Source: Blastocladiella emersonii ATCC 22665 (taxonomy: Eukaryota > Fungi > Blastocladiomycota). From it: a stretch of 64,000 bases of DNA. Below are positions 6,249-31,583 of this stretch, one piece after another; position 1 is the first letter of the stretch; every line of letters starts with the position of its first letter. Both the position numbers and the translations under genes were made by a program. The notes under the pieces are model-generated. The model had not been told where the DNA came from, did no database searches, and saw only the letters and a program-made list of their open reading frames with translations. The DNA lies in contig JANHCV010000001.1 in assembly GCA_025594325.1 (NCBI GenBank), positions 3,410,001 through 3,474,000 on the forward strand, given 5' to 3'.

Positions 6249-6712
6249 GAGGATGCACACCGTCCACGGCCACGGTCTGGTGGCGGGGCACACGCCGGCT
6301 TTGTATCCGCGACCCGCACGCCCCAATGGCCACGGTGACCCGCCCCATCGACCACGGGCTCCGTCGCCCTCCGACCCGTCGTCAAGCGGAACAACACCCT
6401 GGCCATCGAGGCGGGAAGACTGGGATTGGACGGCCTGCGAACCCGAAACGTGTACTCTCGCGCGCTGGTCAAGCTACACTTTGCGCGAGGATCACGGCCG
6501 CGTGGCATCGGGCGGCCGGCACACGTTTCACGCACATGTGCGCGTCCGACGGGCAGTTGAATCGGCTGATCAAGGGTACGACGTTGACGAGCACCAGGGG
6601 AATCGGGCGAACACTTTGGACCGCTCGCGTCAGGTCGGCTGTACAGCGCTGTCACTTTTACACACGCGTATATGAAAGCTCGGAAGCTTCGGCCCGCGAA
6701 AGCGCGAGCGTA

Positions 6713-6932
6713 CAGTCGTTTCCACTCAGAAATGAACAGGCTGGCTGAGTGGCTGCGTTTCGGTCCCCGGATGCGCCTCGGTTGAGCTTTTTTTCGCTCG
6801 CTCGCGCGCTCGAAACGGTCCCCGGTTGCGCTTTTTCGCTGCCCTCTCGCGGCCTCGGCCCGCGGAGCCCCCCGCAACGCATCACGTGCGCTCACACCAC
6901 GCAACCGACGCGTCTCGGGACGCGCTCTTGCA
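6713..6932 (+). repeat. Left 220-bp terminal inverted repeat of the outer element
   Basis: Reverse complement of 9813-10032; the match ends after ...CTCTTGCA at 6932. Confidence 0.95.
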
Positions 6933-9812: not shown

Positions 9813-10032
9813 TGCAAGAGCGCGTCCCGAGACGCGTCGGTTGCGTGGTGTGAGCGCACGTGATGCGTTGCGGGGGGCTCCGCGGGCCGAGGCCGCGAGA
9901 GGGCAGCGAAAAAGCGCAACCGGGGACCGTTTCGAGCGCGCGAGCGAGCGAAAAAAAGCTCAACCGAGGCGCATCCGGGGACCGAAACGCAGCCACTCAG
10001 CCAGCCTGTTCATTTCTGAGTGGAAACGACTG
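9813..10032 (-). repeat. Right 220-bp terminal inverted repeat of the outer element
   Basis: Reverse complement of 6713-6932, followed by TA. Confidence 0.95.
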
Positions 10033-10253
10033 TAGCAACGATCTGATGCATCCATCTCATCGGGGCGGAGGAACCCGTTCATGAGTCGGCTAGTGAGCGG
10101 GGGAGGACGTGCCGCTTTCGCGGCGGTGTGGCGCAGCGCGTGGCGACGTCACTGATCGTCGCGCTGATCTCAACCCACGGTCCCCCCGACGAAACTGTGC
10201 GGACCAAAACCAGTGCTATTCTCCTCGACTACGCGGAACCTTGCGCCAGACCA

Positions 10254-15000: not shown

Positions 15001-15261
15001 GGGCGCGGACGAGAAGGATCCGAGGTCCCACCCGAGCACGGCGCCGTCACGGCTGGCCGAGAGCAGCGTAGCGGGCTCTGATGATCCCGATGACGGTCCC
15101 ACGGCCCACGGCGCAACGGCGAACGCGTTGATGCCGAGCCGATGCGCGGGCGTGTCGTCGGGCCCGGTCGCCAGCGGCAGCGAGTAGGCGATCCGCCTCG
15201 TGGTCTTGGTCGGCGGTCCGCGACCGGGCGAGCCGTCCGAGGCGGTTGATGCATTGGCCAT
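12057..15261 (-). CDS. WDR48: WD40 + DUF3337 deubiquitinase cofactor (WDR48/UAF1/Bun107-like)
   Basis: HRLGINAF, GHMDWVND, HNDYVKCL, GHTDHVRALL, HSDSVWAL repeats. Middle segment YGVNWCAVDTKIGTLSVQL. Ubiquitin-like C-terminus RLLANRMVRVRRI..MLTLATVKTYIWR. Confidence 0.9.
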
Positions 15262-15595
15262 GGCGGCGAGGGTTCGTGCGAGTGATCGGCGGCGAACGAG
15301 GCGTTGATTCGTAGCAGGTTCTGGTGGTGGAAGAGCGCGGGCGCGCAACGGAGCGGGCCGCGAACAGACTTTAGTTGGCGTCGCAGGGTGCCACAGCTGA
15401 CGAGGCAACCCAGCGGTTTGGGGAGGAGAAGAAGCCAGCGAGGCGAGGCGGCCGCGGTGGCGCTGCGCGACGGCGTGGGTCCTGCCCACGTGGCTTGCGC
15501 CGCGACCGGCGATGGCCATGCGGGCGCCGTCCCGAAGTTCCCGAGCGGCGCGCTCTCTCTCTCCCTCGGCTCGCGACCCTCACCACGGCAAACAA

Positions 15596-16501
15596 ATGAA
15601 CCCCTCAGAGAAGCTGGCCTTTGCGCGGGACTACCGCTACCTGTCGGTGAAGGTGCCGCGGGAGCACGTAGCGCTGGTGGTGCTGGACCGCGCGGGCAAG
15701 CTCAACACCATGGACGACGGCTTCTTCCGCGAGTTCCACGACTGCTTCACGCAGCTTGGGGACGACCCCGAGGTCCGCGCCGTGGTGCTGGCGTCGGCGA
15801 GCGACACGGTGTTCACGGCGGGGCTCGACCTCAAGGCGGTCATGGCGGGCATGGTGCCCTCTCCCAGTAACAGTAACGATCCGGCGGAAGAGGGACCGGA
15901 CGTGGCGCGCACGGGCCTGTACCTCATGTCGCTGATTGACCGGTGGCAGCGCGCCTTCACGGCCATGGAGACGTGCCGGGTCCCCGTGATTGCGGCGGTG
16001 CACGGCGCGTGCGTGGGCGGTGGGATCGACCTGATCACGGCGGCCGACATTCGCGTGTGCTCTCCCGCAACGACATTCAGCGTCAAGGAGGTGGACCTGT
16101 CCATGGCGGCGGACCTCGGCACGCTGCAGCGGCTGCCCAAGATTGTCGGCAACCAGTCGCTGGTGCGCGAGTGGTGCTACACGGGGCGCACGGTGACGGC
16201 GGCCGAGGCGCTGGCGGCGGGGCTGGTGAGCCACGTCGTTCCCGTGTCCAAGGATGGCGGGGTATCGCCGCGCGAGGCGGTACTCGGGCACGCGCTCAAG
16301 CTGGCGGCGACGATTGCGCGCAAGAGCCCCGTGGCGACGGTCGGGATCAAGCGCACGCTCGTGTACGCGCGCGACCACACGGTGGACGACGGGCTGCAGC
16401 AGGTGGCCATGTGGAACTCGAGCCAGATCCAGGCGCGCGACCTCATGGCGTCGGCGGCGGCGATTCTGGGCAAGACGACGCCCAAGTTTCCCAAGCTGTG
16501 A
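15596..16501 (+). CDS. ECH1: Delta3,5-Delta2,4-dienoyl-CoA isomerase (crotonase family), PTS1-like C-terminal PKL; possible N-terminal extension from ATG 15512
   Basis: FTAGLDL, PVIAAVHGACVGGGIDLITAADIR, KEVDLSMAADLGTLQRLPKIVGNQS; ends FPKL*. Intronless. Confidence 0.9.
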   Translation: MNPSEKLAFARDYRYLSVKVPREHVALVVLDRAGKLNTMDDGFFREFHDCFTQLGDDPEVRAVVLASASDTVFTAGLDLKAVMAGMVPSPSNSNDPAEEGPDVARTGLYLMSLIDRWQRAFTAMETCRVPVIAAVHGACVGGGIDLITAADIRVCSPATTFSVKEVDLSMAADLGTLQRLPKIVGNQSLVREWCYTGRTVTAAEALAAGLVSHVVPVSKDGGVSPREAVLGHALKLAATIARKSPVATVGIKRTLVYARDHTVDDGLQQVAMWNSSQIQARDLMASAAAILGKTTPKFPKL

Positions 16502-16762
16502 AATGTTTGAGGGGTGGCGGCGCGTGCTGTGCGCGCCGTGGTTCTCTCATTCTATACATTCATGTGTCGATATGCTTCCTCACTCGATGCGCGCGCGTGT
16601 GTGCGACGACGGCGACGGCCTCTATGCGCGTACGAGCGCTGCTATTCGGCTAGAACCCTCACGACGAGAGGATTGTTTGGAGAACACGCCGCGTGAGATG
16701 CGCCGCGACCTCGTAACGATTCTATACACCCTGATCTATCCTCTTGCATTCGGACGCCGCGA

Positions 16763-17266
16763 CTACGAGACGGTCCACTACGAGCAGGCGAGTAATAGTC
16801 AGGCTAGGCGCTCCCGAGTGGTAACAGCGAGGCAATCGTACGTTGAGAGCGTTGCCGTTGGCGCGGTTGGCCTTGGCGACCTCTTGCTCGCGCAGCTCGC
16901 GGTCGCTCAGCTGCCGCGTGCGCTCGAGCTGCGACGCGAGGGCACCGCCGCCGTTCTGGATGCCGCGCTGGGTGTTCTACGGGAACGACTCGAGTGTGAG
17001 TCGGCAACGAGGGTCGTTGCGAGCGAAGCAGGAGGGCGGACCCCAGCGAGCCTCCGCTCGGCCGCCTCGGCGCGTATCCGGCGAGCCTCTTCGTCAGACG
17101 CCGCAGCAGCGCTAGAGGGCGAGGTTGTGTTCACGGCCGCCTGCGGCTCTGGCCGCCGAGTGGGCTGCATCTCCATCGGCCGCGGCGCCGCGGACCCCGA
17201 ACCGCTCCCGAGTCGCTGGCCGCCGCCGCCGCCGCCCTTGGTCGGTTTACCAAAGCAGTTTCCCAT
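16763..17266 (-). CDS. SVIP: SVIP-like small VCP/p97-interacting protein, left-arm copy (3 exons, ~124 aa)
   Basis: Mirror of 26464-26967: MGNCFG acylation motif, RAEAAERR, QRGI, C-terminal LNWTVS*. Confidence 0.8.
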
Positions 17267-17606
17267 TGCGATAAGTTGCTGCTAGCGTTTACGATGCATG
17301 GAATTGTTGAGGGGGAGCAGAGTCGGCGTCCATCGGCTGAAACAGCAGCGTGGGCCCACCGGCCGACCGACCTGGCTGCCGACCCGGCGACCACCGACCT
17401 CCGCCACCCTCGGACGCGGCGCGCCACACGCGGACGCGACGCGGATTCGATGATCCAACCACACAAATACGACGTAACGCTCGGCACGAAAGAGATTGAG
17501 AGTAGGATATACATGTATGGAGACTAGGACAACGAGACAAAAGAACAAACGAGGGTCGAAAGGAGCGCACCGACCGCGCTCCGCACCAGCAACCCGCAAA
17601 AACAGC

Positions 17607-18692
17607 CTACTGGGACGGCTTGCCGGAGCCCTCGGCGAGCGAGATCAGCTCGAGCTCCTTGCGCACGTACTCGCCGCAGTCGACGGCCGGGTACGCGGCG
17701 TTGCGCTCGGGCTCGTCAAACGGACCGGTCGGCTTGAGGACCACGTCGGACGCAATGTGGTAGAAGAGCGTCGACGACACGCGCCACAGCGAGCGGCCGG
17801 CGGCCTTGGCGCGCTCGGCGGCCTCGATCGTCTTCTCGTTGACAATCACCTCGTGGTACCCGGCGAGGACGGCGCCGCCCGTGAGCCACTCGAGCTCCTT
17901 GCCCGCCTGGACGAGCAGGCAGCCGTCGGGGACGGCCACAGACATCTTGATGCCGCTGTTGCGGGCCCAGACGTGGAGCCCGGGGTACCGGGACTTGCCG
18001 TGGATGGTCAGGAAGTTGAGATCGTAGTGGAAACCAGCGAAGACGGTGTTGAGCTGGTTGAAGCGGCAGAGATCCGAACCCGTCGGGGCCAGGAGGTGCG
18101 GGCCGAACTTGGCCTTGTTGACAAAGTCCTTGGCGTCGGCGTAGCCGAGGCCGACGGCGGCCACCTCGGCGACCATCTCGACGGCGTCGTGCAGCTGCTG
18201 GCCGTACGTGTCCATGACCGAGAGCCACTTGTCGGCAAACTTGGCGGGCACGACGGGCGCCGTGTTGAGCTGCGGGTACTTGGACTCGGTCGGGACGGGG
18301 CCAATGCGGTGGAAGAAGCGCCACTTGGGGTCGGCGCCGGTCCACTGCACGGGCTTATCCTCGGCGGGCAGGTCCTCGAGGATCTTCTGGCACTTGGGGT
18401 CGCGGAAGCAGCACGGCTCCTCGACAAACTCGGGCGTGGCGCCAATCTGGTAGTTGAGCTCGGGGCGCACGTCGGCCATCTTGGCGTCGAGCGGCTGCTC
18501 AAAGTACTGCTCCATCATGTCGAGGAACTCGCCGTTGGCGCCCTCGGGCACGCGCGGGTCGCGCACGAGCAGCGCGCCGTACGACTTGAGCGCGTCGGCG
18601 GCCTTGGCGGCCTCGGCCTTGGCGGCGGCCGACGTCGGGTCGGCCATGTAGACGGCGAGGTCGACGACGGGGAGGGCGAGCGGGACCACCAT
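17607..18692 (-). CDS. 2-oxoglutarate/Fe(II) dioxygenase (IPNS/DIOX-like), left-arm copy
   Basis: LPVVDL start; HxD (GFHYDLNFLT), distal His (AGYHEV) and RxS (RVSS). Intronless. Confidence 0.9.
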   Translation of the reverse strand: MVVPLALPVVDLAVYMADPTSAAAKAEAAKAADALKSYGALLVRDPRVPEGANGEFLDMMEQYFEQPLDAKMADVRPELNYQIGATPEFVEEPCCFRDPKCQKILEDLPAEDKPVQWTGADPKWRFFHRIGPVPTESKYPQLNTAPVVPAKFADKWLSVMDTYGQQLHDAVEMVAEVAAVGLGYADAKDFVNKAKFGPHLLAPTGSDLCRFNQLNTVFAGFHYDLNFLTIHGKSRYPGLHVWARNSGIKMSVAVPDGCLLVQAGKELEWLTGGAVLAGYHEVIVNEKTIEAAERAKAAGRSLWRVSSTLFYHIASDVVLKPTGPFDEPERNAAYPAVDCGEYVRKELELISLAEGSGKPSQ

Positions 18693-20029
18693 GGTGTGTG
18701 TGTTGATGCGTTGCAGGTGGAGAGTATGTTGCGTTGCGTGGGCAGCAGCAAGAGAGCGAGGGCGTGTGCGGGGGTCCGCCCGCCTTTTGTAGGCTCGGGC
18801 GGCGGCGGCGGCGGGTCGGACAGGGACGCTTGCGCGCACAAGCACACTTCATGCGCTCGCCACGGCTGCCGCAGTGCGTGCACGAACACATTGGCTGGGA
18901 TTGGGCGAATGACGTGGGATGACTGCCCGCGCAACAACGGAGGAGGTCGGGCGATCCGAAGCGAGGCGAAACCGGGCCGGGCCCCACGCGGCCGGCGGCG
19001 CGTGCTGATTGGTCGCACTCGGCGCTAAGGCTCGAGCGTTAGCCTTGTTGTTCCCGTTTAGCGCGCAGCCCACCCGAACGCTCGCTCGCTCAAGCGCCAC
19101 GCACGCGCTCTTGTCGTTCTGCCGCTCGTCTGTCCGTCCGTGCTGCTAGATGCGTGAGATCGGACACGCGCTCGCGTACGTGTGCGCGACCAGGTCCGCT
19201 GAGCTTCCGCTTCCGGCGCGTCGTACCTCGCGCCGTCTGCTCGCTGACGACTGCTCTCTGATTCTTTGACGCAACGCACGAGTGCTGATGCTGGCTCGCG
19301 TATCATGGGCGCGAGGGTGAGGGTGCGTGGCTCGCTGTCCGTCTAGCATCACTAGTCCGATCAGATCGCTCTTCTTCACTGTAGTGTCGGACACGCTCGC
19401 GCGGTTGGACGTCGAGCGCTCCCGCAACTAGCTTTGTTCGAATACCTTGGTTGTTGAGGAGACGGAGGGAAGCGAGGGTCAAGAGGGAGTTGAGGTGCAA
19501 AGCTCGCGCCGCATGCAACTCCCGCTACGGCAATCCATCGGACTCTCCGTGCATCGATATGCAGGATCTTCTTAAACCTTGGGATCAGCGACGTTTTGTG
19601 CGACTCGGCCATGGGCCCCCCCGAGAAGCGCGCTCTTGGCTCGCGAGACGTCACGTCACGTGGTGGCGCAACGCGTCCATCAACGCGGCCATCAATGCGC
19701 TGAGCGAGGCGGCCATCCTGACTATCGCAGTGTGAAGTCTGGTCGTAACACCTAGAGTAAGCGCGCGCTGACTGGCAGTTCATGCAAGCTTTGCCATCGT
19801 GTACTGGTGGCTTGATCGCTCGCACGACGTTCTTCCAGCCTGCGGTCCGTTGACAGGGAAAGACGTGTCGCCACTACAGCGCCAAAATGAGAAATGGTTC
19901 ATGTATATACCTCTCTTCTATCGATGATATGGCAGCAGCTACGTGGACAAAACGAGAGTCGGATCGGTGAGCGCAGCACAAAGGGCAGGCGCAGGGCAAC
20001 CAAGCCTGACACGCAGGGCCGCACTTGGG

Positions 20030-20614
20030 ACACTTGCTGGTCCCGTGGACATTGGAGTAGCAGCTTGTACACACTGGGGCCCTGTGCTACATACAGGTGA
20101 GCTGTTTCACGCCCAACTTCTCGATCTCAAGCATCCGTAGACGGTGGCGCTCGTTCTCCTCCCGCGAACATGCAAGGACTTGCTTGATCCGAGCCTGTAA
20201 GGCCAATGCCTTGTGGATTGCGAGTGTCAGGGACCACTCAAGGTCTGCGTTCGAGGACCGGGTCTGAGGCGACACGAACGACACGGCGAGCAGGGATGGA
20301 AGCAAGCCCTCGAGTGCATCGATGAGTTTTGTTAGGTTCTCCTGCGAGTTTGAGGGGAGGAAACTGCCAGGCCCCTTGGCGCCGCCGCACTGAGCGTGAT
20401 TACCTACCTCGCAGGCAAATTTCGACAAGTGGCGGAGGTCGCTCATCTTGACAAAGGTTACGTCCGCACGCGATAGCCCCGCCTTCTGCAGGACAATGTT
20501 GTGCACGACACGAGGCGGGCGTGCGAGACCGTGGTCGTGGCCAGCCGAGGCATTTGACAGAGGAAGTGGCGAAGACATGCGCCTTGTTGCCGGAGTAGTG
20601 CTACACTCGCACAT
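20030..20614 (-). pseudogene. gag-like remnant with CCHC zinc knuckle, left-arm copy
   Basis: Mirror of 23116-23700. Confidence 0.55.
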
Positions 20615-20724
20615 CTCGTGAGTAGTGCTTGGGCGTAGACGCGAGGGCGTTCCTCAAGCGCTGCGGTGACTCGCAGCGCAGTGCACACCGGCTGGTAAGT
20701 GACGGACGCACACTTTTGCAGAAT

Positions 20725-21510
20725 GTAAATGCACCAGTCGTTAGCGCTGGCGACGATCCCGCTCTGTATGAGGGTTGCAGCGAGCTGGATCTACTACTCG
20801 TGGTCGGCCTAGCGCAGACTGTACAGCAACCTCTTGAGCTAGAACATGGCCCTCCTTGACGTCCATGCCCACGGACACGCGCGTAATTACACGCATTTCA
20901 AGCGCGCGTGGACGTACGAGCTCGTCCCGTCGAGAGAGTGGACGGGCAGGCTCTTCGCGGCGGCGCTGGCGAACAACGTGCGCGCGGAACCGTGGGCGAC
21001 GGCGGCCGCGAATGTGGCATTCAAGTCGCGGACCACGATCTGTTTGTTACGGTGCGCGGCGAGACGCGCCTTGAAGCGGGTCATCTCGCCCTCACTGTTG
21101 CACTTGAGCGTGAACACAAACATGGCCCTGATGACAAGGGCTTCGCGGACGAAACACGCGGCCGTGGACCCATACAGCCGGAACGCATTGGGGAGGTTGA
21201 CGGCGGTAGCGATCGACGCACGGGTCTTGACGGCCACGTCCTCCACCAGCCGCTCGATGCGCCCGGTTGTGTAGTGGTTGCCTAGTGGAGAGAAGTGCAA
21301 CTGAATGCCCTTGACGGCGGCCCACTCGGTGAACGTGTTGTCCTTGAACACGTCGCCGTTGCAGCTGGTCTGATTCACGGGGACATTACATTTATTATTC
21401 ATGTGCGACTACAGGTAGCACCTTCCCTCGATGAGAACCTTTTACCATTTGCAGTAACCCAACGCCTGAAAGTCGCGCTCAGCCACTCACACGATCTACA
21501 ATCACAGTCA
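20725..21510 (-). mobile_element. Degenerate Ty1/copia integrase-RT fragment, left-arm copy
   Basis: Mirror of 22220-23005. Confidence 0.85.
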
Positions 21511-21752
21511 CCTTGGATTGCTGTCGTGCCTCCGCCCTGCACTCACACAATTCCTTTTGCACCGCTTCCCGAGCCCCTTCGTGCATGTGAATGGCCGCTG
21601 CCATCGGCTATCGGTCTGCCACCATCGCCGCATGCCGCCAGACTCACTCAAAGTCCAAGGTCTCGCCCTTCCACTCGCTCCTCCCCTCCGAAATGACCGT
21701 TCCTGCTGCTTGCAGCTCGTCTTTTTGTCTCTCGTCCCCTTGAAACTACCGC

Positions 21753-21977
21753 GGTCAGGAAGAAGCGTGGCCTTCTGTTGCAGCGCGGTGCTGCAGCGGA
21801 CGAAACGAGGTAGTCGCACGCTGTCGTACATGCCGGGAGCAAGACTGGGCCAAAGCGGGGGCGTCTCGTGGCTACAAGAGCTCGTACACATAGCTGTACC
21901 AGCGGGCGGGCGCTCGAGGAGGCTCATGGTGGGCGTGTACAATCTAGCGAGAAAAAATATGTCAACGAGGGAGCGGG
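21753..21977. other. 225-bp unique spacer at the centre of the palindrome
   Basis: Not self-complementary; arms end ...TTGAAACTACCGC and resume GCGGTAGTTTCAA... Confidence 0.95.
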
Positions 21978-22219
21978 GCGGTAGTTTCAAGGGGACGAGA
22001 GACAAAAAGACGAGCTGCAAGCAGCAGGAACGGTCATTTCGGAGGGGAGGAGCGAGTGGAAGGGCGAGACCTTGGACTTTGAGTGAGTCTGGCGGCATGC
22101 GGCGATGGTGGCAGACCGATAGCCGATGGCAGCGGCCATTCACATGCACGAAGGGGCTCGGGAAGCGGTGCAAAAGGAATTGTGTGAGTGCAGGGCGGAG
22201 GCACGACAGCAATCCAAGG

Positions 22220-23005
22220 TGACTGTGATTGTAGATCGTGTGAGTGGCTGAGCGCGACTTTCAGGCGTTGGGTTACTGCAAATGGTAAAAGGTTCTCATC
22301 GAGGGAAGGTGCTACCTGTAGTCGCACATGAATAATAAATGTAATGTCCCCGTGAATCAGACCAGCTGCAACGGCGACGTGTTCAAGGACAACACGTTCA
22401 CCGAGTGGGCCGCCGTCAAGGGCATTCAGTTGCACTTCTCTCCACTAGGCAACCACTACACAACCGGGCGCATCGAGCGGCTGGTGGAGGACGTGGCCGT
22501 CAAGACCCGTGCGTCGATCGCTACCGCCGTCAACCTCCCCAATGCGTTCCGGCTGTATGGGTCCACGGCCGCGTGTTTCGTCCGCGAAGCCCTTGTCATC
22601 AGGGCCATGTTTGTGTTCACGCTCAAGTGCAACAGTGAGGGCGAGATGACCCGCTTCAAGGCGCGTCTCGCCGCGCACCGTAACAAACAGATCGTGGTCC
22701 GCGACTTGAATGCCACATTCGCGGCCGCCGTCGCCCACGGTTCCGCGCGCACGTTGTTCGCCAGCGCCGCCGCGAAGAGCCTGCCCGTCCACTCTCTCGA
22801 CGGGACGAGCTCGTACGTCCACGCGCGCTTGAAATGCGTGTAATTACGCGCGTGTCCGTGGGCATGGACGTCAAGGAGGGCCATGTTCTAGCTCAAGAGG
22901 TTGCTGTACAGTCTGCGCTAGGCCGACCACGAGTAGTAGATCCAGCTCGCTGCAACCCTCATACAGAGCGGGATCGTCGCCAGCGCTAACGACTGGTGCA
23001 TTTAC
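22220..23005 (+). mobile_element. Degenerate Ty1/copia pol fragment (integrase core fused to RT N-terminus), right-arm copy
   Basis: Integrase motifs: VIVDRVSG; SCNGDVF..KGIQLHFSP..TGRIERL. RVT_2 motifs: MFVFTLKCNSEGEMTRFKARL..ATFA..HSLD; LKRLLYSLR*ADHE**; ANDWCIY. Confidence 0.85.
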
Positions 23006-23115
23006 ATTCTGCAAAAGTGTGCGTCCGTCACTTACCAGCCGGTGTGCACTGCGCTGCGAGTCACCGCAGCGCTTGAGGAACGCCCTCGCGTCTACGCCCA
23101 AGCACTACTCACGAG

Positions 23116-23700
23116 ATGTGCGAGTGTAGCACTACTCCGGCAACAAGGCGCATGTCTTCGCCACTTCCTCTGTCAAATGCCTCGGCTGGCCACGACCACG
23201 GTCTCGCACGCCCGCCTCGTGTCGTGCACAACATTGTCCTGCAGAAGGCGGGGCTATCGCGTGCGGACGTAACCTTTGTCAAGATGAGCGACCTCCGCCA
23301 CTTGTCGAAATTTGCCTGCGAGGTAGGTAATCACGCTCAGTGCGGCGGCGCCAAGGGGCCTGGCAGTTTCCTCCCCTCAAACTCGCAGGAGAACCTAACA
23401 AAACTCATCGATGCACTCGAGGGCTTGCTTCCATCCCTGCTCGCCGTGTCGTTCGTGTCGCCTCAGACCCGGTCCTCGAACGCAGACCTTGAGTGGTCCC
23501 TGACACTCGCAATCCACAAGGCATTGGCCTTACAGGCTCGGATCAAGCAAGTCCTTGCATGTTCGCGGGAGGAGAACGAGCGCCACCGTCTACGGATGCT
23601 TGAGATCGAGAAGTTGGGCGTGAAACAGCTCACCTGTATGTAGCACAGGGCCCCAGTGTGTACAAGCTGCTACTCCAATGTCCACGGGACCAGCAAGTGT
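23116..23700 (+). pseudogene. gag-like remnant with CCHC zinc knuckle, right-arm copy
   Basis: ORF 23116..23643 ends in TAG and continues in the same frame into CTSCYSNVHGTSKC (CX2CX4HX4C, 23659-23700). Confidence 0.55.
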
Positions 23701-25037
23701 CCCAAGTGCGGCCCTGCGTGTCAGGCTTGGTTGCCCTGCGCCTGCCCTTTGTGCTGCGCTCACCGATCCGACTCTCGTTTTGTCCACGTAGCTGCTGCCA
23801 TATCATCGATAGAAGAGAGGTATATACATGAACCATTTCTCATTTTGGCGCTGTAGTGGCGACACGTCTTTCCCTGTCAACGGACCGCAGGCTGGAAGAA
23901 CGTCGTGCGAGCGATCAAGCCACCAGTACACGATGGCAAAGCTTGCATGAACTGCCAGTCAGCGCGCGCTTACTCTAGGTGTTACGACCAGACTTCACAC
24001 TGCGATAGTCAGGATGGCCGCCTCGCTCAGCGCATTGATGGCCGCGTTGATGGACGCGTTGCGCCACCACGTGACGTGACGTCTCGCGAGCCAAGAGCGC
24101 GCTTCTCGGGGGGGCCCATGGCCGAGTCGCACAAAACGTCGCTGATCCCAAGGTTTAAGAAGATCCTGCATATCGATGCACGGAGAGTCCGATGGATTGC
24201 CGTAGCGGGAGTTGCATGCGGCGCGAGCTTTGCACCTCAACTCCCTCTTGACCCTCGCTTCCCTCCGTCTCCTCAACAACCAAGGTATTCGAACAAAGCT
24301 AGTTGCGGGAGCGCTCGACGTCCAACCGCGCGAGCGTGTCCGACACTACAGTGAAGAAGAGCGATCTGATCGGACTAGTGATGCTAGACGGACAGCGAGC
24401 CACGCACCCTCACCCTCGCGCCCATGATACGCGAGCCAGCATCAGCACTCGTGCGTTGCGTCAAAGAATCAGAGAGCAGTCGTCAGCGAGCAGACGGCGC
24501 GAGGTACGACGCGCCGGAAGCGGAAGCTCAGCGGACCTGGTCGCGCACACGTACGCGAGCGCGTGTCCGATCTCACGCATCTAGCAGCACGGACGGACAG
24601 ACGAGCGGCAGAACGACAAGAGCGCGTGCGTGGCGCTTGAGCGAGCGAGCGTTCGGGTGGGCTGCGCGCTAAACGGGAACAACAAGGCTAACGCTCGAGC
24701 CTTAGCGCCGAGTGCGACCAATCAGCACGCGCCGCCGGCCGCGTGGGGCCCGGCCCGGTTTCGCCTCGCTTCGGATCGCCCGACCTCCTCCGTTGTTGCG
24801 CGGGCAGTCATCCCACGTCATTCGCCCAATCCCAGCCAATGTGTTCGTGCACGCACTGCGGCAGCCGTGGCGAGCGCATGAAGTGTGCTTGTGCGCGCAA
24901 GCGTCCCTGTCCGACCCGCCGCCGCCGCCGCCCGAGCCTACAAAAGGCGGGCGGACCCCCGCACACGCCCTCGCTCTCTTGCTGCTGCCCACGCAACGCA
25001 ACATACTCTCCACCTGCAACGCATCAACACACACACC

Positions 25038-26123
25038 ATGGTGGTCCCGCTCGCCCTCCCCGTCGTCGACCTCGCCGTCTACATGGCCGACCCGACGTCG
25101 GCCGCCGCCAAGGCCGAGGCCGCCAAGGCCGCCGACGCGCTCAAGTCGTACGGCGCGCTGCTCGTGCGCGACCCGCGCGTGCCCGAGGGCGCCAACGGCG
25201 AGTTCCTCGACATGATGGAGCAGTACTTTGAGCAGCCGCTCGACGCCAAGATGGCCGACGTGCGCCCCGAGCTCAACTACCAGATTGGCGCCACGCCCGA
25301 GTTTGTCGAGGAGCCGTGCTGCTTCCGCGACCCCAAGTGCCAGAAGATCCTCGAGGACCTGCCCGCCGAGGATAAGCCCGTGCAGTGGACCGGCGCCGAC
25401 CCCAAGTGGCGCTTCTTCCACCGCATTGGCCCCGTCCCGACCGAGTCCAAGTACCCGCAGCTCAACACGGCGCCCGTCGTGCCCGCCAAGTTTGCCGACA
25501 AGTGGCTCTCGGTCATGGACACGTACGGCCAGCAGCTGCACGACGCCGTCGAGATGGTCGCCGAGGTGGCCGCCGTCGGCCTCGGCTACGCCGACGCCAA
25601 GGACTTTGTCAACAAGGCCAAGTTCGGCCCGCACCTCCTGGCCCCGACGGGTTCGGATCTCTGCCGCTTCAACCAGCTCAACACCGTCTTCGCTGGTTTC
25701 CACTACGATCTCAACTTCCTGACCATCCACGGCAAGTCCCGGTACCCCGGGCTCCACGTCTGGGCCCGCAACAGCGGCATCAAGATGTCTGTGGCCGTCC
25801 CCGACGGCTGCCTGCTCGTCCAGGCGGGCAAGGAGCTCGAGTGGCTCACGGGCGGCGCCGTCCTCGCCGGGTACCACGAGGTGATTGTCAACGAGAAGAC
25901 GATCGAGGCCGCCGAGCGCGCCAAGGCCGCCGGCCGCTCGCTGTGGCGCGTGTCGTCGACGCTCTTCTACCACATTGCGTCCGACGTGGTCCTCAAGCCG
26001 ACCGGTCCGTTTGACGAGCCCGAGCGCAACGCCGCGTACCCGGCCGTCGACTGCGGCGAGTACGTGCGCAAGGAGCTCGAGCTGATCTCGCTCGCCGAGG
26101 GCTCCGGCAAGCCGTCCCAGTAG
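25038..26123 (+). CDS. 2-oxoglutarate/Fe(II) dioxygenase, right-arm copy
   Basis: Translation identical to 17607-18692. Confidence 0.9.
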   Translation: MVVPLALPVVDLAVYMADPTSAAAKAEAAKAADALKSYGALLVRDPRVPEGANGEFLDMMEQYFEQPLDAKMADVRPELNYQIGATPEFVEEPCCFRDPKCQKILEDLPAEDKPVQWTGADPKWRFFHRIGPVPTESKYPQLNTAPVVPAKFADKWLSVMDTYGQQLHDAVEMVAEVAAVGLGYADAKDFVNKAKFGPHLLAPTGSDLCRFNQLNTVFAGFHYDLNFLTIHGKSRYPGLHVWARNSGIKMSVAVPDGCLLVQAGKELEWLTGGAVLAGYHEVIVNEKTIEAAERAKAAGRSLWRVSSTLFYHIASDVVLKPTGPFDEPERNAAYPAVDCGEYVRKELELISLAEGSGKPSQ

Positions 26124-26463
26124 GCTGTTTTTGCGGGTTGCTGGTGCGGAGCGCGGTCGGTGCGCTCCTTTCGACCCTCGTTTGTTCTTTTGTCTCGTTG
26201 TCCTAGTCTCCATACATGTATATCCTACTCTCAATCTCTTTCGTGCCGAGCGTTACGTCGTATTTGTGTGGTTGGATCATCGAATCCGCGTCGCGTCCGC
26301 GTGTGGCGCGCCGCGTCCGAGGGTGGCGGAGGTCGGTGGTCGCCGGGTCGGCAGCCAGGTCGGTCGGCCGGTGGGCCCACGCTGCTGTTTCAGCCGATGG
26401 ACGCCGACTCTGCTCCCCCTCAACAATTCCATGCATCGTAAACGCTAGCAGCAACTTATCGCA

Positions 26464-26967
26464 ATGGGAAACTGCTTTGGTAAACCGACCAAGGGCGGCG
26501 GCGGCGGCGGCCAGCGACTCGGGAGCGGTTCGGGGTCCGCGGCGCCGCGGCCGATGGAGATGCAGCCCACTCGGCGGCCAGAGCCGCAGGCGGCCGTGAA
26601 CACAACCTCGCCCTCTAGCGCTGCTGCGGCGTCTGACGAAGAGGCTCGCCGGATACGCGCCGAGGCGGCCGAGCGGAGGCTCGCTGGGGTCCGCCCTCCT
26701 GCTTCGCTCGCAACGACCCTCGTTGCCGACTCACACTCGAGTCGTTCCCGTAGAACACCCAGCGCGGCATCCAGAACGGCGGCGGTGCCCTCGCGTCGCA
26801 GCTCGAGCGCACGCGGCAGCTGAGCGACCGCGAGCTGCGCGAGCAAGAGGTCGCCAAGGCCAACCGCGCCAACGGCAACGCTCTCAACGTACGATTGCCT
26901 CGCTGTTACCACTCGGGAGCGCCTAGCCTGACTATTACTCGCCTGCTCGTAGTGGACCGTCTCGTAG
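26464..26967 (+). CDS. SVIP: SVIP-like protein, right-arm copy; exons 26464-26688, 26754-26888, 26953-26967
   Basis: MGNCFGKP..EEARRIRAEAAERRLAG | NTQRGIQ..NALN | WTVS*. Matches the recalled animal SVIP pattern MGxC..AEAAERR..RGI..LRWTVS. Confidence 0.8.
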
Positions 26968-27228
26968 TCGCGGCGTCCGAATGCAAGAGGATAGATCAGG
27001 GTGTATAGAATCGTTACGAGGTCGCGGCGCATCTCACGCGGCGTGTTCTCCAAACAATCCTCTCGTCGTGAGGGTTCTAGCCGAATAGCAGCGCTCGTAC
27101 GCGCATAGAGGCCGTCGCCGTCGTCGCACACACGCGCGCGCATCGAGTGAGGAAGCATATCGACACATGAATGTATAGAATGAGAGAACCACGGCGCGCA
27201 CAGCACGCGCCGCCACCCCTCAAACATT

Positions 27229-28134
27229 TCACAGCTTGGGAAACTTGGGCGTCGTCTTGCCCAGAATCGCCGCCGCCGACGCCATGAGGTCGCGCGCCTG
27301 GATCTGGCTCGAGTTCCACATGGCCACCTGCTGCAGCCCGTCGTCCACCGTGTGGTCGCGCGCGTACACGAGCGTGCGCTTGATCCCGACCGTCGCCACG
27401 GGGCTCTTGCGCGCAATCGTCGCCGCCAGCTTGAGCGCGTGCCCGAGTACCGCCTCGCGCGGCGATACCCCGCCATCCTTGGACACGGGAACGACGTGGC
27501 TCACCAGCCCCGCCGCCAGCGCCTCGGCCGCCGTCACCGTGCGCCCCGTGTAGCACCACTCGCGCACCAGCGACTGGTTGCCGACAATCTTGGGCAGCCG
27601 CTGCAGCGTGCCGAGGTCCGCCGCCATGGACAGGTCCACCTCCTTGACGCTGAATGTCGTTGCGGGAGAGCACACGCGAATGTCGGCCGCCGTGATCAGG
27701 TCGATCCCACCGCCCACGCACGCGCCGTGCACCGCCGCAATCACGGGGACCCGGCACGTCTCCATGGCCGTGAAGGCGCGCTGCCACCGGTCAATCAGCG
27801 ACATGAGGTACAGGCCCGTGCGCGCCACGTCCGGTCCCTCTTCCGCCGGATCGTTACTGTTACTGGGAGAGGGCACCATGCCCGCCATGACCGCCTTGAG
27901 GTCGAGCCCCGCCGTGAACACCGTGTCGCTCGCCGACGCCAGCACCACGGCGCGGACCTCGGGGTCGTCCCCAAGCTGCGTGAAGCAGTCGTGGAACTCG
28001 CGGAAGAAGCCGTCGTCCATGGTGTTGAGCTTGCCCGCGCGGTCCAGCACCACCAGCGCTACGTGCTCCCGCGGCACCTTCACCGACAGGTAGCGGTAGT
28101 CCCGCGCAAAGGCCAGCTTCTCTGAGGGGTTCAT
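27229..28134 (-). CDS. ECH1: Dienoyl-CoA isomerase, right-arm copy (no upstream in-frame ATG)
   Basis: Identical to 15596-16501 from MNPSEK onward; the upstream 'start' at 28185 is TTG. Confidence 0.9.
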   Translation of the reverse strand: MNPSEKLAFARDYRYLSVKVPREHVALVVLDRAGKLNTMDDGFFREFHDCFTQLGDDPEVRAVVLASASDTVFTAGLDLKAVMAGMVPSPSNSNDPAEEGPDVARTGLYLMSLIDRWQRAFTAMETCRVPVIAAVHGACVGGGIDLITAADIRVCSPATTFSVKEVDLSMAADLGTLQRLPKIVGNQSLVREWCYTGRTVTAAEALAAGLVSHVVPVSKDGGVSPREAVLGHALKLAATIARKSPVATVGIKRTLVYARDHTVDDGLQQVAMWNSSQIQARDLMASAAAILGKTTPKFPKL

Positions 28135-28367
28135 TTGTTTGCCGTGGTGAGGGTCGTGAGAGAGCGAGGACCGCCAGGCGGACAAGCGACGCGTTTTCTA
28201 AGGTCGGCGTCGGCGTCCTTCACGTCGGCTGCTTCGGCTCCCGGCTTCCGGGTCGCTCCGAGTCGAAGTCCTGCAGGTCGACGTCATCGCAGCATGCTGA
28301 TCCCGAAGTAGCCCAGCTTAGGTTGCAATCAAAAAGTGTTGTATTGAGCGCGAGGACCGCGAGCCCG

Positions 28368-31300
28368 TCAACGGCCGCCCTGGAACTGCCGGAACGCTGC
28401 GTACTGGTCGCCGCCGCCTACACGTCCCGCCCACAATGATCAGCTCGCGTCGTCCAATCCTCGCGCATCGACCCGTACCCATGCCCATCCCGCGGAAGTC
28501 GCCAGCCGAGTAGCTGGACGTCATGCTCTGGCCGCCCTGCTGCTGCTGCTGTTGCTGCTGCTGCATCATCATCATCTGCTGCTGGGCGTGCGCCTGGGCC
28601 TGCTGCTGCATCATGGCCATCATCGCCGGGTTCATCATGGCCGGGTTCATGCCCGCGGCCTGCGCCTGCTGCATCCCCATCATGCCCGTCGCCGCGGCGG
28701 CCATGGGCATCATGGCCGAGCCCTGCGACACGGACCGCACCATGCCGGGTGTCATGCCGCTCATGGCCGACAGCGCCGGGCTGCCCGCCGACGACGCGGA
28801 GCTGTTGAGCGGGCGGCCGAACGGGTTGTCGGGCGCTACGAGAGGGAAAAGTCACGTCAGTTTCTTCACCCCACTACGACGGAAAGTGCGAAGCGAGAGC
28901 ACGTACTCGCATTCTGCCAGTTCGCCGACCGCCCCGTCGAGCTGGCTGTGACCGGCGCCATGCCCATGCCCATGGGCCGCTGCTGCTGCTGCTGCTGGGC
29001 GGCGCCGGGCGTGGTCCCGGCCATCATAGCGTTCGCGAGCATCATCATCTGCTGCTGCTGCTGCGCTTGCTGCTGCTGCTGGGCCTGCTGCTGCTGGGCC
29101 TGCTGCTGCTGGGCCATGAGCATCTGGTGCTGCTGGAGCTGCTGCTGGTGCTGGAGCGTCGACAGCGACACGTTGGTCGGGACGAACCCGGGCGCCTGCG
29201 CGGGGTTGGTCGGGATGAGCGGCGCGGGGAGCGCGCGCTGCGGCTGCTGGGGCACGGCCGCGGCACTCGCCGTCGCCGCGGCCGCGAGCATCGTCACGGC
29301 GGGCATCGGCGGCGGCGTGTTGATCTTGGGCATGGGCGGCGGCGTCGGGACCGCGCGCGCGGGCGTCGGCGCCGGTAGGGGGATCGCGGGCGTCAGCGAC
29401 ACGGACGGCTGCACTGGCGACATGGGCGAGGACCGGCGGCGCGCGTTGGCGCTGGCGGCGCCCGCCGCGAGCGTGGACGCCGTGGCCGACCCGCCGCTGC
29501 TGCGCCGCGTGCTGCCGGACCGCGTCGCCGGGTGCGGGCGGCCCGAGCCTGCGGGCGTCGGGACGAGCGGCGTGCCCGACGTCATGTTGGCGCGCGCGAG
29601 CTCCTCCTGCTGCAGGCGGCGCGCGAGCTCCTCGTCGGCGCGCAGCTGGTCGGCGGGCGCGGCCGAGACCGACGACGCGGTCGAGCGCATGGATCCGCTG
29701 AGCCCGGGGCCGGTGCCGCCCGAGATCTTGACGCGCTCGGAAAAGTACTGCTCGATGCGCTGGAGGTTCTGCGCCTCGAGCTCCTGCTCGCGCGATGCCG
29801 CCTGCTTGTACGACCCGGCGTGCTTGAGGATGCGCAGGATATCGCCCTCGCGGACGTCGAGGCCCTTGAGGATCTCGCGGTTGAGGTCGGGCAGCGTGCT
29901 CCCGTCGAGCTTCTCGCGGACGAACCGGGCCGCGACGACGCGGGCCTCGGCGGGCTCGACGCCGCACGCCGTGACGAATCGGAACCAGTCGAACCCATTG
30001 TACGTGGTGGCGCCCGCCGCCGACAGGTGCGCGGGGAGGGCGAGCCCCTTGAGCTTGTACGCGGCGATCTGGTCGTCGCGCGACAGCGCGGCCAGCGGCA
30101 CGTCAATCTTGTGCCCGTTGGTCTTGTGCAGCTGCACCTTGTCGCCGTTGAGGTCGACGAACGCCGCCTCGGTCTTGTGCACGCCCGACGCGTCGAGCCA
30201 CACGCGCACCTTGCTCGGGTCGGGCCGGTCCGCCGGCGCGCTCGCGGCGCTCGCGCCCGTGCCGTGCACCGTGACGGGGGTGCCCGGGCGCGGCGACGCG
30301 GGGCGGTCAGCACCCGTCCCGTTGACGGCGACGGCGCGCGAGGCGATGGTCGTCGGGCGCTCGGGCAAGGCGGGGCGGGCCGGGAGCGCGGGCGGCGGGC
30401 GAGCGGCGGCCGACGCGGCGCGCGCGCGCTGCTGCTCCTCCTCGCGCTTCCGGCGCTCCTCGTCCTGCTTGCGGCGCTCCTCCTCCTCGATCTTGCGCGC
30501 GGCCTCGCGGCGCGCCCGCGCTGCCTCCTCCTCGCGCCTCAGCTGGCGCTGGTACGAGTCGGCGGCGGCTTCCTCCTCGGCGCGGCGGCGCGCAGCCGCC
30601 TCTTCCTCGGCGCGGCGACGGGCGGCGGCGGCCGCTTCCTCCTCGGCACGCCGGCGCGAGGCTTCTGCCGCAGCAGCCCCCTCTTCGGCGCGGCGGCGCG
30701 CCTCGGCCTCGGCCTGCTGGATGGCGGCCATGGAGGGGGGCGGGGGTAGCGCGGGCCCGCTCGGCGCGGCAGCGGGCGCCGTGTGGGCGGCGGCGGGTGA
30801 GACGCCGACGGCGGCCTTGATGTCGAGGTAGTTGCGCGGGACCATGCCCTCCTTGCCCGAGCGGTCCTTTTTCGACGAGACGATGCGGACGAGGGCCCAG
30901 TCCGGGTCCGACTCGTCGTCGAGGACCTGGCAGTGCTCGCCCTCGCGGATGTCGAGGTCGTCGGGCTCCTGCGGGTCGTAGTCGTACAGCGCCGTGGCGA
31001 TCTTGAGCGGGGCCGCGAGCGCCGCGGGCGACGGCGCGATCGGTGGTGGCACCGCAGCCGGGGCGGGCGCGGGCGCGGGAGGGGCGGGGGTAGCGGGGGC
31101 GGGGGCAGGCGCGGCAGCAGCACCTGCGCCGTCGCGATCGACGTAGGTGGCGGGGACCAGGCCGTAGTAGTCGCCCTGGTCGGTCGGCATGCGCGCGACG
31201 AGCCAGTCGGCGTCGAGCTCCTGCAGAATGTCGAGCGGCGACGTCTCGTAGATGGTCAGCTCGTCGTCGGCCGCCGCCTCGTAGTCGTACGCCGCGACCG

Positions 31301-31583
31301 CCTGGTACAGCGTGGGCGCCTACACATCGCAAAGATCGTGGTCAACACACGCGCGCGTCGGGATGGCGCGGTACACGGCGAAGAGTACCTCGTCGACATA
31401 GTTCTCGGGCACGTTGCCCTCGAGGTCCTCGGCGTCGCCGCCGGCCTTGAGCACGCAGCGCAGCCACCCGGGCTCGTCCTCGCCCACGACGAACAGCAGC
31501 TGGCCCTCGGCCACGGCGAGCTCGTCGTCCTGCTGCGGCTCGTAGTCGTACACGGCCTGCACGATGCGGAGGACGGGCGCCAT
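28368..31583 (-). CDS. SLA1: Endocytic adaptor Sla1
   Basis: Three SH3 domains, SHD1 (VRVWLDASGVHKTEAAFV..LHKTNGHKIDVP), SHD2 (GFDWFRF..EGDILR), LIPT and NPF motifs, Gln/Met-rich tail; three introns inferred. Confidence 0.92.

What the first reader, a model, noticed from the sequence alone, without database searches (positions are those of the whole stretch)
15574..28156. 12.6-kb gene-containing quasi-palindrome with apparently identical 6,179-bp arms
Mirrored ORFs sum to 43730 with identical translations, so there are no net indels even across decayed TE sequence that should drift freely. Unique, intact genes continue on both sides (WDR48 and SLA1), which argues against a simple fold-back read artefact. 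The structure is either very recent or actively homogenised by arm-to-arm gene conversion, as in Y-chromosome palindromes. It doubles ECH1, SVIP and a 2OG oxygenase. A 225-bp spacer between multi-kb arms is normally unstable, so persistence would need an explanation. A misjoin of two haplotypes remains possible.
Basis: partly seen in the sequence, partly recalled or inferred. Interest (0 to 1): 0.9.

Follow-up and report, generated by a model that had tools for sequence, protein, structure and literature searches.

The report
Real 12.6-kb palindromic gene duplication
A 6.2-kb stretch carrying three genes of the water mould-like fungus Blastocladiella emersonii really is present twice, head-to-head around a 225-bp centre; it is a true, probably young, fold-back duplication of a known kind, not an assembly error.

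Summary
The arms 15574-21752 and 21978-28156 are exact reverse complements (6,179 bp, 0 mismatches) around a unique 225-bp spacer.

The window is B. emersonii ATCC 22665, JANHCV010000001.1, bases 3,400,001-3,464,000.

The structure is not an artefact. In the k=31 contigs of two different runs of the source strain:
- the arm is one collapsed contig of exactly 6,179 nt, at word depth 280.8 and 61.9;
- the centre is one contig of exactly 285 nt (30 + 225 + 30) with inverted arm ends on both sides, at depth 139.9 and 31.3.

So arm to spacer is 2.0 to 1, and the spacer sits at single-copy depth.

Synteny suggests that the left copy is parental. WDR48 and ECH1 are divergent neighbours in Allomyces, and ECH1 and SLA1 are convergent in B. 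britannica. The right copy was then inserted 211 bp past the SLA1 stop codon.

The best reading is one recent fold-back or template-switch inverted duplication. Arm-to-arm gene conversion is not excluded.

Persistence needs no special explanation. Yeast FS2 (6-kb arms, 280-bp spacer) is stable in wild type.

Earlier notes of this scan report about 13 other large inverted duplications or palindromes, many with identical or near-identical arms, elsewhere in this genome. I did not verify them, and the genome paper does not mention them.

One caveat remains: the first 45 bp or so of the right flank are only partly found in the runs' contigs.

The parts
15574..21752 (+). Left arm (6,179 bp), probably the parental copy
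   Evidence: Exact reverse complement of 21978-28156. In runs X1 and X2 it collapses into one 6,179-nt contig at twice single-copy depth. Its outer neighbour WDR48 is also the divergent neighbour of ECH1 in Allomyces.
21753..21977 (.). Unique 225-bp spacer, the presumed fold-back loop
   Evidence: Not palindromic and has no other copy in the window. A 285-nt contig covering 21723-22007 matches with 0 mismatches at depth 139.9 (X1) and 31.3 (X2), which is single-copy depth. No Pfam hit for ORFs crossing it.
21978..28156 (-). Right arm (6,179 bp), probably the derived copy
   Evidence: It ends 211 bp downstream of the SLA1 stop codon.
15596..16501 (+). ECH1-like dienoyl-CoA isomerase, 301 aa. 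The mirror copy is at 27229-28134 (-).
   Evidence: PF00378, E=9.5e-41. Both copies are annotated in the record. Best named relatives are Catenaria 62%, B. britannica 57% and Allomyces 55%.
16763..17266 (-). Predicted 124-aa gene of unknown family. The mirror copy is at 26464-26967 (+).
   Evidence: Gene call in the record. No Pfam hit.
17607..18692 (-). 2OG-Fe(II)/DIOX_N oxygenase, 361 aa. The mirror copy is at 25038-26123 (+).
   Evidence: PF14226, E=1.9e-6; PF03171, E=3e-4. Gene calls.
20887..21402 (-). Ty1/copia reverse-transcriptase fragment in the lower-GC inner 3 kb of the arm. The mirror copy is at 22328-22843 (+).
   Evidence: PF07727 RVT_2, E=1.2e-8, also annotated in the record. Neighbouring ORF pieces have no Pfam hit. 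GC is 58-60% there, against about 66% for the window overall.
12057..15261 (-). Left flank gene: WDR48/UAF1-like, 1,024 aa
   Evidence: DUF3337 + WD40. Gene call. 46% identical over 893 aa to the Allomyces neighbour of ECH1.
28368..31583 (-). Right flank gene: SLA1, 1,004 aa
   Evidence: SH3, SHD1 and SAM_4 domains. Gene call. Orthologues lie next to ECH1 in Catenaria and B. britannica.
28157..28201 (.). First 45 bp of the right flank, whose exact sequence is not fully confirmed
   Evidence: Only 4 of 6 sampled 31-mers of 28112-28201 are held by each of the four runs. For 13000-22000 the share in X1 was 1.00.

Best explanation
This is a genuine chromosomal palindromic segmental duplication, flank-arm-spacer-arm'-flank, fixed in the sequenced B. 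emersonii strain. Most likely it arose recently in one event. A break or collapsed fork lay about 210 bp downstream of SLA1, just beyond a copia relic. That left a 3' end which folded back about 225 nt, or switched to the complementary template. Synthesis then copied 6.18 kb back towards WDR48, stopping 22 bp upstream of the ECH1 start codon. The new end was rejoined to the SLA1 side. The result is a second, inverted copy of ECH1, a 124-aa gene, a 2OG oxygenase and the copia relic. The right-hand ECH1 keeps only 22 bp of its native upstream DNA. The structure has no dedicated function. It persists because a 225-bp loop is long enough to make hairpin or cruciform formation rare. Shown: the structure, the copy number and the gene content. 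Inferred: which arm is parental, the fold-back mechanism and the young age.
For: Structure: exact 6,179-bp arms and a unique spacer. Read-level support: X1 and X2 each give one contig of exactly 6,179 nt (depth 280.8 and 61.9) and one of exactly 285 nt = 30 + 225 + 30 (depth 139.9 and 31.3). These are the unitig lengths a k=31 graph must give if the graph forks at both arm ends and the spacer has inverted arm ends on both sides. The ratios are 2.01 and 1.98. Other long X1 contigs sit at 124-151, so the spacer is single copy and the palindrome is in all genomes of the sample. X1 and X2 differ in year, depth and contig sizes. Their depths fit the HiFi (186x) and GAIIx 65-nt (64x) libraries of the genome paper, which came from separate DNA preparations. 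Source record. Polarity: WDR48 and ECH1 are divergent neighbours in Allomyces, and ECH1 and SLA1 are convergent in B. britannica. Both match the left copy. Mechanism by analogy: fold-back inverted duplications carry a single-copy spacer that corresponds to the loop (PMC3907307). Stability: yeast FS2, with 6-kb arms and a 280-bp spacer, is stable in wild type (PMC7999016). Zero differences over 2 x 6,179 bp, decayed TE sequence included, fits a young age.
Against: Catenaria has SLA1 and ECH1 in tandem orientation, as in the right copy, so the polarity rests on two relatives against one. All three are distant (55-62% ECH1 identity). Junction microhomology, the signature of fold-back priming, cannot be read without the unrearranged allele; by strict count both outer and inner joints are blunt. 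Human fold-back duplications come with terminal deletions or translocations, whereas this one is interstitial with both flanks intact, so it needs a second join. Two of 6 sampled words at the right outer junction are missing from all runs. Identity alone cannot separate youth from gene conversion.
Confidence: 0.7

Rival explanations
1. An old palindrome kept identical by arm-to-arm gene conversion, as in the human Y-chromosome palindromes. Differential loss of one arm in other lineages would then explain why ECH1 faces SLA1 in opposite orientations in different Blastocladiomycota.
For: 0 differences in 6,179 bp, including non-coding and decayed TE sequence. Each outer junction context recurs in a relative: WDR48-ECH1 in Allomyces and tandem SLA1-ECH1 in Catenaria. 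Earlier unchecked notes of this scan describe identical arms embedded in older diverged inverted duplications elsewhere in the genome.
Against: Catenaria, Allomyces and B. britannica each show one ECH1 at the locus and no palindrome. An in-place inverted copy automatically puts ECH1' next to whatever gene follows the spacer, so the likeness to Catenaria needs only an ordinary inversion there. There is no diverged homology beyond the arm edges.
Confidence: 0.15
2. The same real palindrome, but the right arm (next to SLA1) is the parental copy and the left arm is the new one, inserted between the WDR48 promoter and the spacer.
For: Catenaria has SLA1(+) followed by ECH1(+) in tandem, with SET also linked, as on the right side of the window.
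Against: The divergent WDR48-ECH1 pair is shared with Allomyces, and the convergent ECH1/SLA1 orientation with B. britannica. In Catenaria two other genes separate SLA1 and ECH1, and its nearby 2OG gene is not homologous to the one in the arm.
Confidence: 0.25
3. Assembly artefact: a chimeric fold-back long read, an error of the LJA assembler's graph, or a misjoin of two haplotypes.
For: The assembly came from a low-input HiFi library with purge_dups and manual refinement. Many similar palindromes are noted in the same assembly. The right-junction words are only 4 of 6 present.
Against: Both spacer junctions and the forks at exactly 15574 and 21752 are present in the contigs of two different runs, with arm:spacer depth 2.0:1 and the spacer at single-copy depth. 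The depths fit two separate libraries of the genome paper, HiFi and Illumina GAIIx, made from separate DNA preparations. A fold-back chimera would give 1x arms and a contig palindromic to its end. A haplotype misjoin cannot yield a spacer bounded by inverted arm ends on both sides.
Confidence: 0.03
4. A mobile or programmed element: a foldback or long-TIR transposon, or an invertible switch whose 225-bp spacer flips.
For: Long identical inverted arms could support homologous flip-flop of the spacer. There is TE-derived DNA at the inner ends of the arms.
Against: There is no target-site duplication at 15573/15574 against 28156/28157. The arms hold host genes in conserved synteny. There are no other copies in the window. 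The spacer has no recombinase gene and no recognisable ORF or motif.
Confidence: 0.03

Closest known systems
Fold-back (snap-back) inverted duplications with a single-copy 'disomic' spacer (Hermetz et al. 2014, PMC3907307; yeast and CHO models cited there)
   Same: Two copies in inverted orientation in cis. A short normal-copy spacer at the centre corresponds to the fold-back loop. The boundaries are sharp and non-recurrent, and no long pre-existing repeats are needed.
   Different: Here the duplication is interstitial, with both flanks intact. There is no terminal deletion, translocation or ring, so a second join back to the distal side is required. The arms are 6 kb rather than up to megabases. 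Microhomology could not be scored because the unrearranged allele is not available.
Yeast fragile site FS2: two 6-kb inverted Ty1 elements separated by about 280 bp (as described in PMC7999016)
   Same: Almost the same geometry: 6-kb arms and a spacer of 200-300 bp. FS2 is stable in wild-type cells, which explains how such a structure can persist.
   Different: The FS2 arms are two independent transposon insertions, not a duplication of host genes. FS2 becomes fragile when DNA polymerase alpha is limiting; whether this locus does so is unknown.
Primate sex-chromosome palindromes maintained by arm-to-arm gene conversion
   Same: Gene-bearing arms with essentially no divergence around a unique spacer.
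   Different: Those are tens of kb to Mb long, conserved across species and hold amplified testis genes. Here the relatives examined have a single copy, and no evidence of age was found.
[quoted passage not shown]
   Same: A replication-fork template switch at short inverted repeats creates inverted copies with short unique joints.
   Different: ODIRA yields inverted triplications. Here the depth and the sequence show exactly two copies.

Membership tests
Fold-back inverted duplication with single-copy spacer | Two adjacent copies in inverted orientation separated by a short unique spacer | tested here: met
   6,179-bp exact arms and a 225-bp unique spacer.
Fold-back inverted duplication with single-copy spacer | Arms at twice the copy number of spacer and flanks in the reads | tested here: met
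   280.8 against 139.9 (X1) and 61.9 against 31.3 (X2). Other long X1 contigs are at 124-151.
Fold-back inverted duplication with single-copy spacer | Short inverted microhomology between the spacer end and the end of the duplicated segment in the unrearranged allele | not testable with these tools
   No unrearranged allele exists in the four runs, which all come from one strain. In the derived sequence any microhomology is absorbed into the innermost arm bases (CCGC/GCGG).
Fold-back inverted duplication with single-copy spacer | One copy sits in the ancestral context and the other is new | tested here: inconclusive
   The left context matches Allomyces and B. britannica; the right context matches Catenaria.
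Fold-back inverted duplication with single-copy spacer | Accompanying terminal deletion, translocation or ring (the human cases) | tested here: not met
   Both flanks continue with intact, syntenic genes inside a 5.14-Mb contig. This lowers membership of the human class, not the fold-back mechanism itself.
Gene-conversion-maintained (Y-type) palindrome | Near-zero arm divergence | tested here: met
   0 mismatches in 6,179 bp.
Gene-conversion-maintained (Y-type) palindrome | The palindrome is old: orthologous palindrome or second copy in related species | tested here: not met
   A single ECH1 hit per locus in Catenaria, Allomyces, B. britannica, Sorochytrium, Coelomomyces and Paraphysoderma. 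All of them are distant relatives.
Assembly artefact (chimeric fold-back read or haplotype misjoin) | Arms at single-copy depth, or central junctions absent from an independent library | tested here: not met
   2:1 depth and a 285-nt central contig in both X1 and X2.
Foldback / long-TIR transposon | Target-site duplication, TE-only arms, further copies | tested here: not met
   There is no direct repeat at the outer edges. The arms hold host genes. There is no other copy in the window.
ODIRA inverted triplication | Three copies with the middle one inverted | tested here: not met
   Two copies in the sequence and in the depth.
Flip-flop invertible segment | Both spacer orientations present in the population | not testable with these tools
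   This needs reads longer than 6.4 kb.

The most novel reading that the evidence does not exclude
The B. emersonii ATCC 22665 genome may hold a whole population of multi-kb perfect palindromes. This scan notes about 13 other large inverted duplications or palindromes in it, with arms of 1.5-15 kb and intervening sequence of 1.6 to about 49 kb. A lineage- or strain-specific tendency to fold-back replication could produce them, or frequent arm-to-arm conversion could maintain them. Such palindromes could act as intermediates of gene-block inversion (duplicate in inverted order, then lose one arm). That would explain the flips of ECH1 relative to SLA1 among Blastocladiomycota.
Probability: 0.2. 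Interest if true: 0.7.

Novelty: new member of a known kind. Interest (0 to 1): 0.42.

Why it matters
For this locus the result is mainly quality control. The duplicated ECH1, 124-aa and 2OG genes in the public B. emersonii annotation are real paralogues and not assembly noise. The right ECH1 copy has lost its native promoter. Transcription through the locus would make a 6-kb hairpin RNA. The wider interest is the lead that this 34-Mb genome may carry many perfect gene-bearing palindromes, which the genome paper does not mention. If a whole-assembly self-alignment confirms them, the species would offer a natural series of fold-back duplications of different sizes. They could be used to study how such structures form, persist, homogenise and resolve in an early-diverging fungus that has been propagated clonally since the early 1950s.

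Tried and rejected
1. Direct k-mer test of the right outer junction. The 60-nt core held too few sampled words (an error). The 90-nt stretch gave 4 of 6 words in every run. This is ambiguous and I could not resolve it, because the single read-laying run had gone to the centre.

2. Homology beyond the arm edges, which would indicate an older and larger duplication. None was found.

3. Conservation of the block ECH1...2OG with Catenaria. Rejected: the Catenaria 2OG gene (PF13640) gives no tblastn hit to the window's 2OG.

4. Extra relatives to settle polarity. The Sorochytrium, Coelomomyces and Paraphysoderma loci have neither WDR48 nor SLA1 near ECH1. The A. macrogynus protein was not on record.

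5. Annotation of the inner 3 kb and the spacer. Only one RVT_2 fragment was found; about 15 other ORF pieces gave no Pfam hit.

6. The SVIP label: no Pfam hit.

7. Verifying a second palindrome of the same genome. The nearest noted one lies 52 kb beyond the window. Walking there in 10-kb steps would have needed more look-ups than remained, so I did not try.

8. The centromere and invertible-switch readings from earlier notes. Nothing in the sequence supports them.
Full report
**1. The observation**

The repeat finder reports one inverted pair, 15570-21752 against 21978-28160, with 225 nt between the arms. A base-by-base test of the rule i + j = 43730 gives 100% complementarity in every 250-bp bin from the spacer out to the edges, and about 25-30% beyond them.

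The exact arms are 15574-21752 and 21978-28156: 6,179 bp with no mismatch and no indel. One mismatch follows (15573/28157), then three matching bases, then noise.

The spacer 21753-21977 is not self-complementary (24%) and has no other copy of 14 nt or more in the window. A gapped blastn of 4.6 kb of each flank shows no further homology.

**2. Source and content**

The ECH1 protein is encoded twice on NCBI record JANHCV010000001.1 (5,142,960 bp), at 3,415,596 and 3,448,134. The window is therefore bases 3,400,001-3,464,000 of that record.

JANHCV is the accession of the Blastocladiella emersonii ATCC 22665 assembly. That assembly was made from PacBio HiFi reads (mean 10.5 kb, 6.37 Gb) with the LJA assembler, purge_dups, and Pilon polishing with 65-nt GAIIx reads. 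It has 21 contigs totalling 34.27 Mb (PMC9730499). The paper never uses the words 'inverted' or 'palindrom'.

| Feature | Window coordinates | Evidence |
|---|---|---|
| ECH1-like isomerase, 301 aa | 15596-16501 (+) | PF00378, |
| 124-aa gene, no family | 16763-17266 (-) | |
| 2OG/DIOX_N oxygenase, 361 aa | 17607-18692 (-) | |
| Ty1/copia RVT_2 fragment | 20887-21402 (-) | |
| WDR48-like, 1,024 aa (left flank) | 12057-15261 (-) | |
| SLA1, 1,004 aa (right flank) | 28368-31583 (-) | |
| PMT (right flank) | 31964-34279 (-) | |
| SET-domain gene (right flank) | 34586-35872 (-) | |

The copia fragment lies in a lower-GC inner 3 kb of the arm. The left edge of the palindrome lies 22 bp upstream of the ECH1 start codon, inside the short divergent WDR48-ECH1 intergenic region. 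The right edge lies 211 bp beyond the SLA1 stop codon.

**3. Real or artefact**

Four public runs hold the region. All come from one sample and are kept as Logan k=31 contigs.

A de Bruijn graph of a true palindrome must give two things. One is a collapsed arm unitig of exactly 6,179 nt, which breaks where the graph forks at both ends. The other is a central unitig of 30 + 225 + 30 = 285 nt. That is what both deep runs show.

| Run | Arm contig | Depth | Central contig (21723-22007, 0 mismatches) | Depth | Ratio |
|---|---|---|---|---|---|
| X1 | 6,179 nt | 280.8 | 285 nt | 139.9 | 2.01 |
| X2 | 6,179 nt | 61.9 | 285 nt | 31.3 | 1.98 |

Other long X1 contigs that touch the stretch have depths of 124-151, so the spacer is at single-copy depth and the arms at twice that. 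X3 has low depth; one of its contigs runs from the arm across the left spacer junction to 21961.

This leads to four conclusions:
- There is one spacer per genome.
- The spacer is bounded on both sides by inverted arm ends.
- There are two arms per genome.
- The outer arm end forks into two different flanks exactly at 15574.

A fold-back chimeric read would give 1x arms. A haplotype misjoin cannot give a spacer with arm ends on both sides.

X1 (2022) and X2 (2021) differ in depth and contig sizes. Their depths fit the 186x HiFi library and the 64x 65-nt GAIIx library of the paper (64 x 35/65 is about 34 in 31-mers). Those libraries came from separate DNA preparations. That match is my inference, because run names are coded.

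**4. A caveat**

The share of sampled words over 13000-22000, which includes the left outer junction, was 1.00 in X1. A 90-nt stretch across the right outer junction gave only 4 of 6 words in all four runs. The 60-nt core held fewer than two sampled words.

So at least one word in or next to 28157-28201 is missing from every run's contigs. Possible causes:
- a small consensus or polishing error next to the (GA)n run at 28158-28164;
- an allele that the contig builder popped;
- a slightly different joint.

The fork at 15574 and the 2x depth still require a second outer flank.

**5. Which arm is parental**

The closest sequenced relatives are distant, with ECH1 identity of 55-62%.

| Relative | Arrangement | Matches |
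|---|---|---|
| Allomyces arbusculus | WDR48 orthologue (46% over 893 aa) is the divergent upstream neighbour of ECH1 | left junction |
| Blastocladiella britannica | ECH1(+) and SLA1(-) convergent and adjacent | orientation of the left copy relative to SLA1 |
| Catenaria anguillulae | SET(-), SLA1(+), two genes, ECH1(+), in tandem | right copy |

The Catenaria 2OG gene near ECH1 is not homologous to the one in the arm. Sorochytrium, Coelomomyces and Paraphysoderma are uninformative. Every relative has a single ECH1 at the locus.

The simplest history is an ancestral order WDR48(-), ECH1(+), 124-aa gene(-), 2OG(-), copia relic, spacer, SLA1(-). The right arm was then added between the spacer and SLA1. 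An inverted copy made in place automatically puts ECH1' next to SLA1, so the likeness to Catenaria needs only an ordinary inversion there. I put the left-parental reading at about two to one.

**6. Mechanism (inferred)**

The anatomy is two inverted copies in cis, a short single-copy loop and sharp non-repeat edges. This is the anatomy of fold-back or template-switch inverted duplications (PMC3907307). In that class a resected 3' end, or a nascent strand, pairs a few bases with its own or the sister complementary strand. It then copies backwards, and the loop remains as the spacer.

Here a second join back to the SLA1 side is needed, because both flanks are intact.

The innermost arm bases (CCGC / GCGG) could be the priming microhomology. 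This cannot be shown without the unrearranged allele. The outer joint is blunt by strict count. There is no target-site duplication and no recombinase, so I reject the transposon and programmed-switch readings.

**7. Age and persistence**

No difference in 2 x 6,179 bp, decayed TE sequence included, means either a young event or homogenisation. As my own estimate, with 1e-10 to 1e-9 substitutions per site per nuclear division, the 95% upper bound is roughly 2e5 to 2e6 divisions. The strain was isolated over 70 years ago, so an origin in culture is not excluded.

If X2 is the older GAIIx preparation, the palindrome was already fixed then and has been stable since.

Persistence is not surprising. 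Yeast FS2 consists of two 6-kb inverted Ty elements with a 280-bp spacer, and it is described as completely stable in wild type (PMC7999016).

**8. Wider context (unchecked leads)**

Earlier first-reader notes of this scan list about 13 other large inverted duplications or palindromes in the same genome, many with identical or near-identical arms. Arms run from 1.5 to 15 kb, and the sequence between them from 1.6 to about 49 kb. Some are described as identical cores inside older diverged inverted duplications.

I could not reach any of them with the remaining look-ups. This one proved exact and real, so the others deserve a whole-assembly check. That check is where any larger interest lies.

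**9. Verdict**

The locus is a real, fixed, interstitial palindromic duplication of three genes. It is a new member of a known kind of rearrangement. It is of modest interest by itself, and of more interest if the genome-wide pattern holds.

Noticed in passing
window 6711-6932 and 9813-10034: A second perfect inverted repeat: 222-nt arms, 100% identical, 2,880 nt apart. It looks like the terminal inverted repeats of a DNA transposon. Earlier notes call it a Mutator-like element nested in another element.
   Followed up: no
window 15512-15595: Only the left ECH1 copy has an in-frame upstream ATG (15512). It would add 28 Arg/Ser-rich residues, which look like a presequence. The right copy diverges 22 bp upstream of the shared ATG. 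The annotation gives 301 aa for both copies. The protein ends in PKL.
   Followed up: partly
window 28112-28201: Only 4 of 6 sampled 31-mers across the right outer junction are held by each of the four runs, against 1.00 for the left side in X1. This may be a small consensus error beside the GA run at 28158-28164, or allelic variation.
   Followed up: partly
window 17217-17237 and 18588-18629 / 18792-18819: Short GC-rich motifs inside the arm are shared with many other contigs of the genome. X1 summed depth peaks at 635 and 750 there, with many loose ends. They look like dispersed low-complexity repeats such as GCC runs.
   Followed up: no
run X4, loose ends at window 17145, 21338, 21547: Contigs of run X4 end in loxP-like linker sequence (ATAACTTCGTATA...). 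X4 is therefore probably a Cre-lox mate-pair library at very low depth. Its single C>T at 16966 and the 1-nt insertion at 20419 each sit in a single contig of depth 3-4 and are probably errors.
   Followed up: no
L001 (Catenaria), L002 (Allomyces), L003 (B. britannica) against window 12-36 kb: ECH1 stays linked to SLA1 in Catenaria, B. britannica and B. emersonii, but in different relative orientations. It is linked to WDR48 in Allomyces and B. emersonii, and SET-SLA1 linkage is shared with Catenaria. The small ECH1 block has flipped repeatedly in this phylum.
   Followed up: partly
window 29000-31000: GC reaches 74-77% over the SLA1 coding region, and long ORFs are open in several frames on both strands. 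ORF lists alone are misleading in this genome.
   Followed up: no
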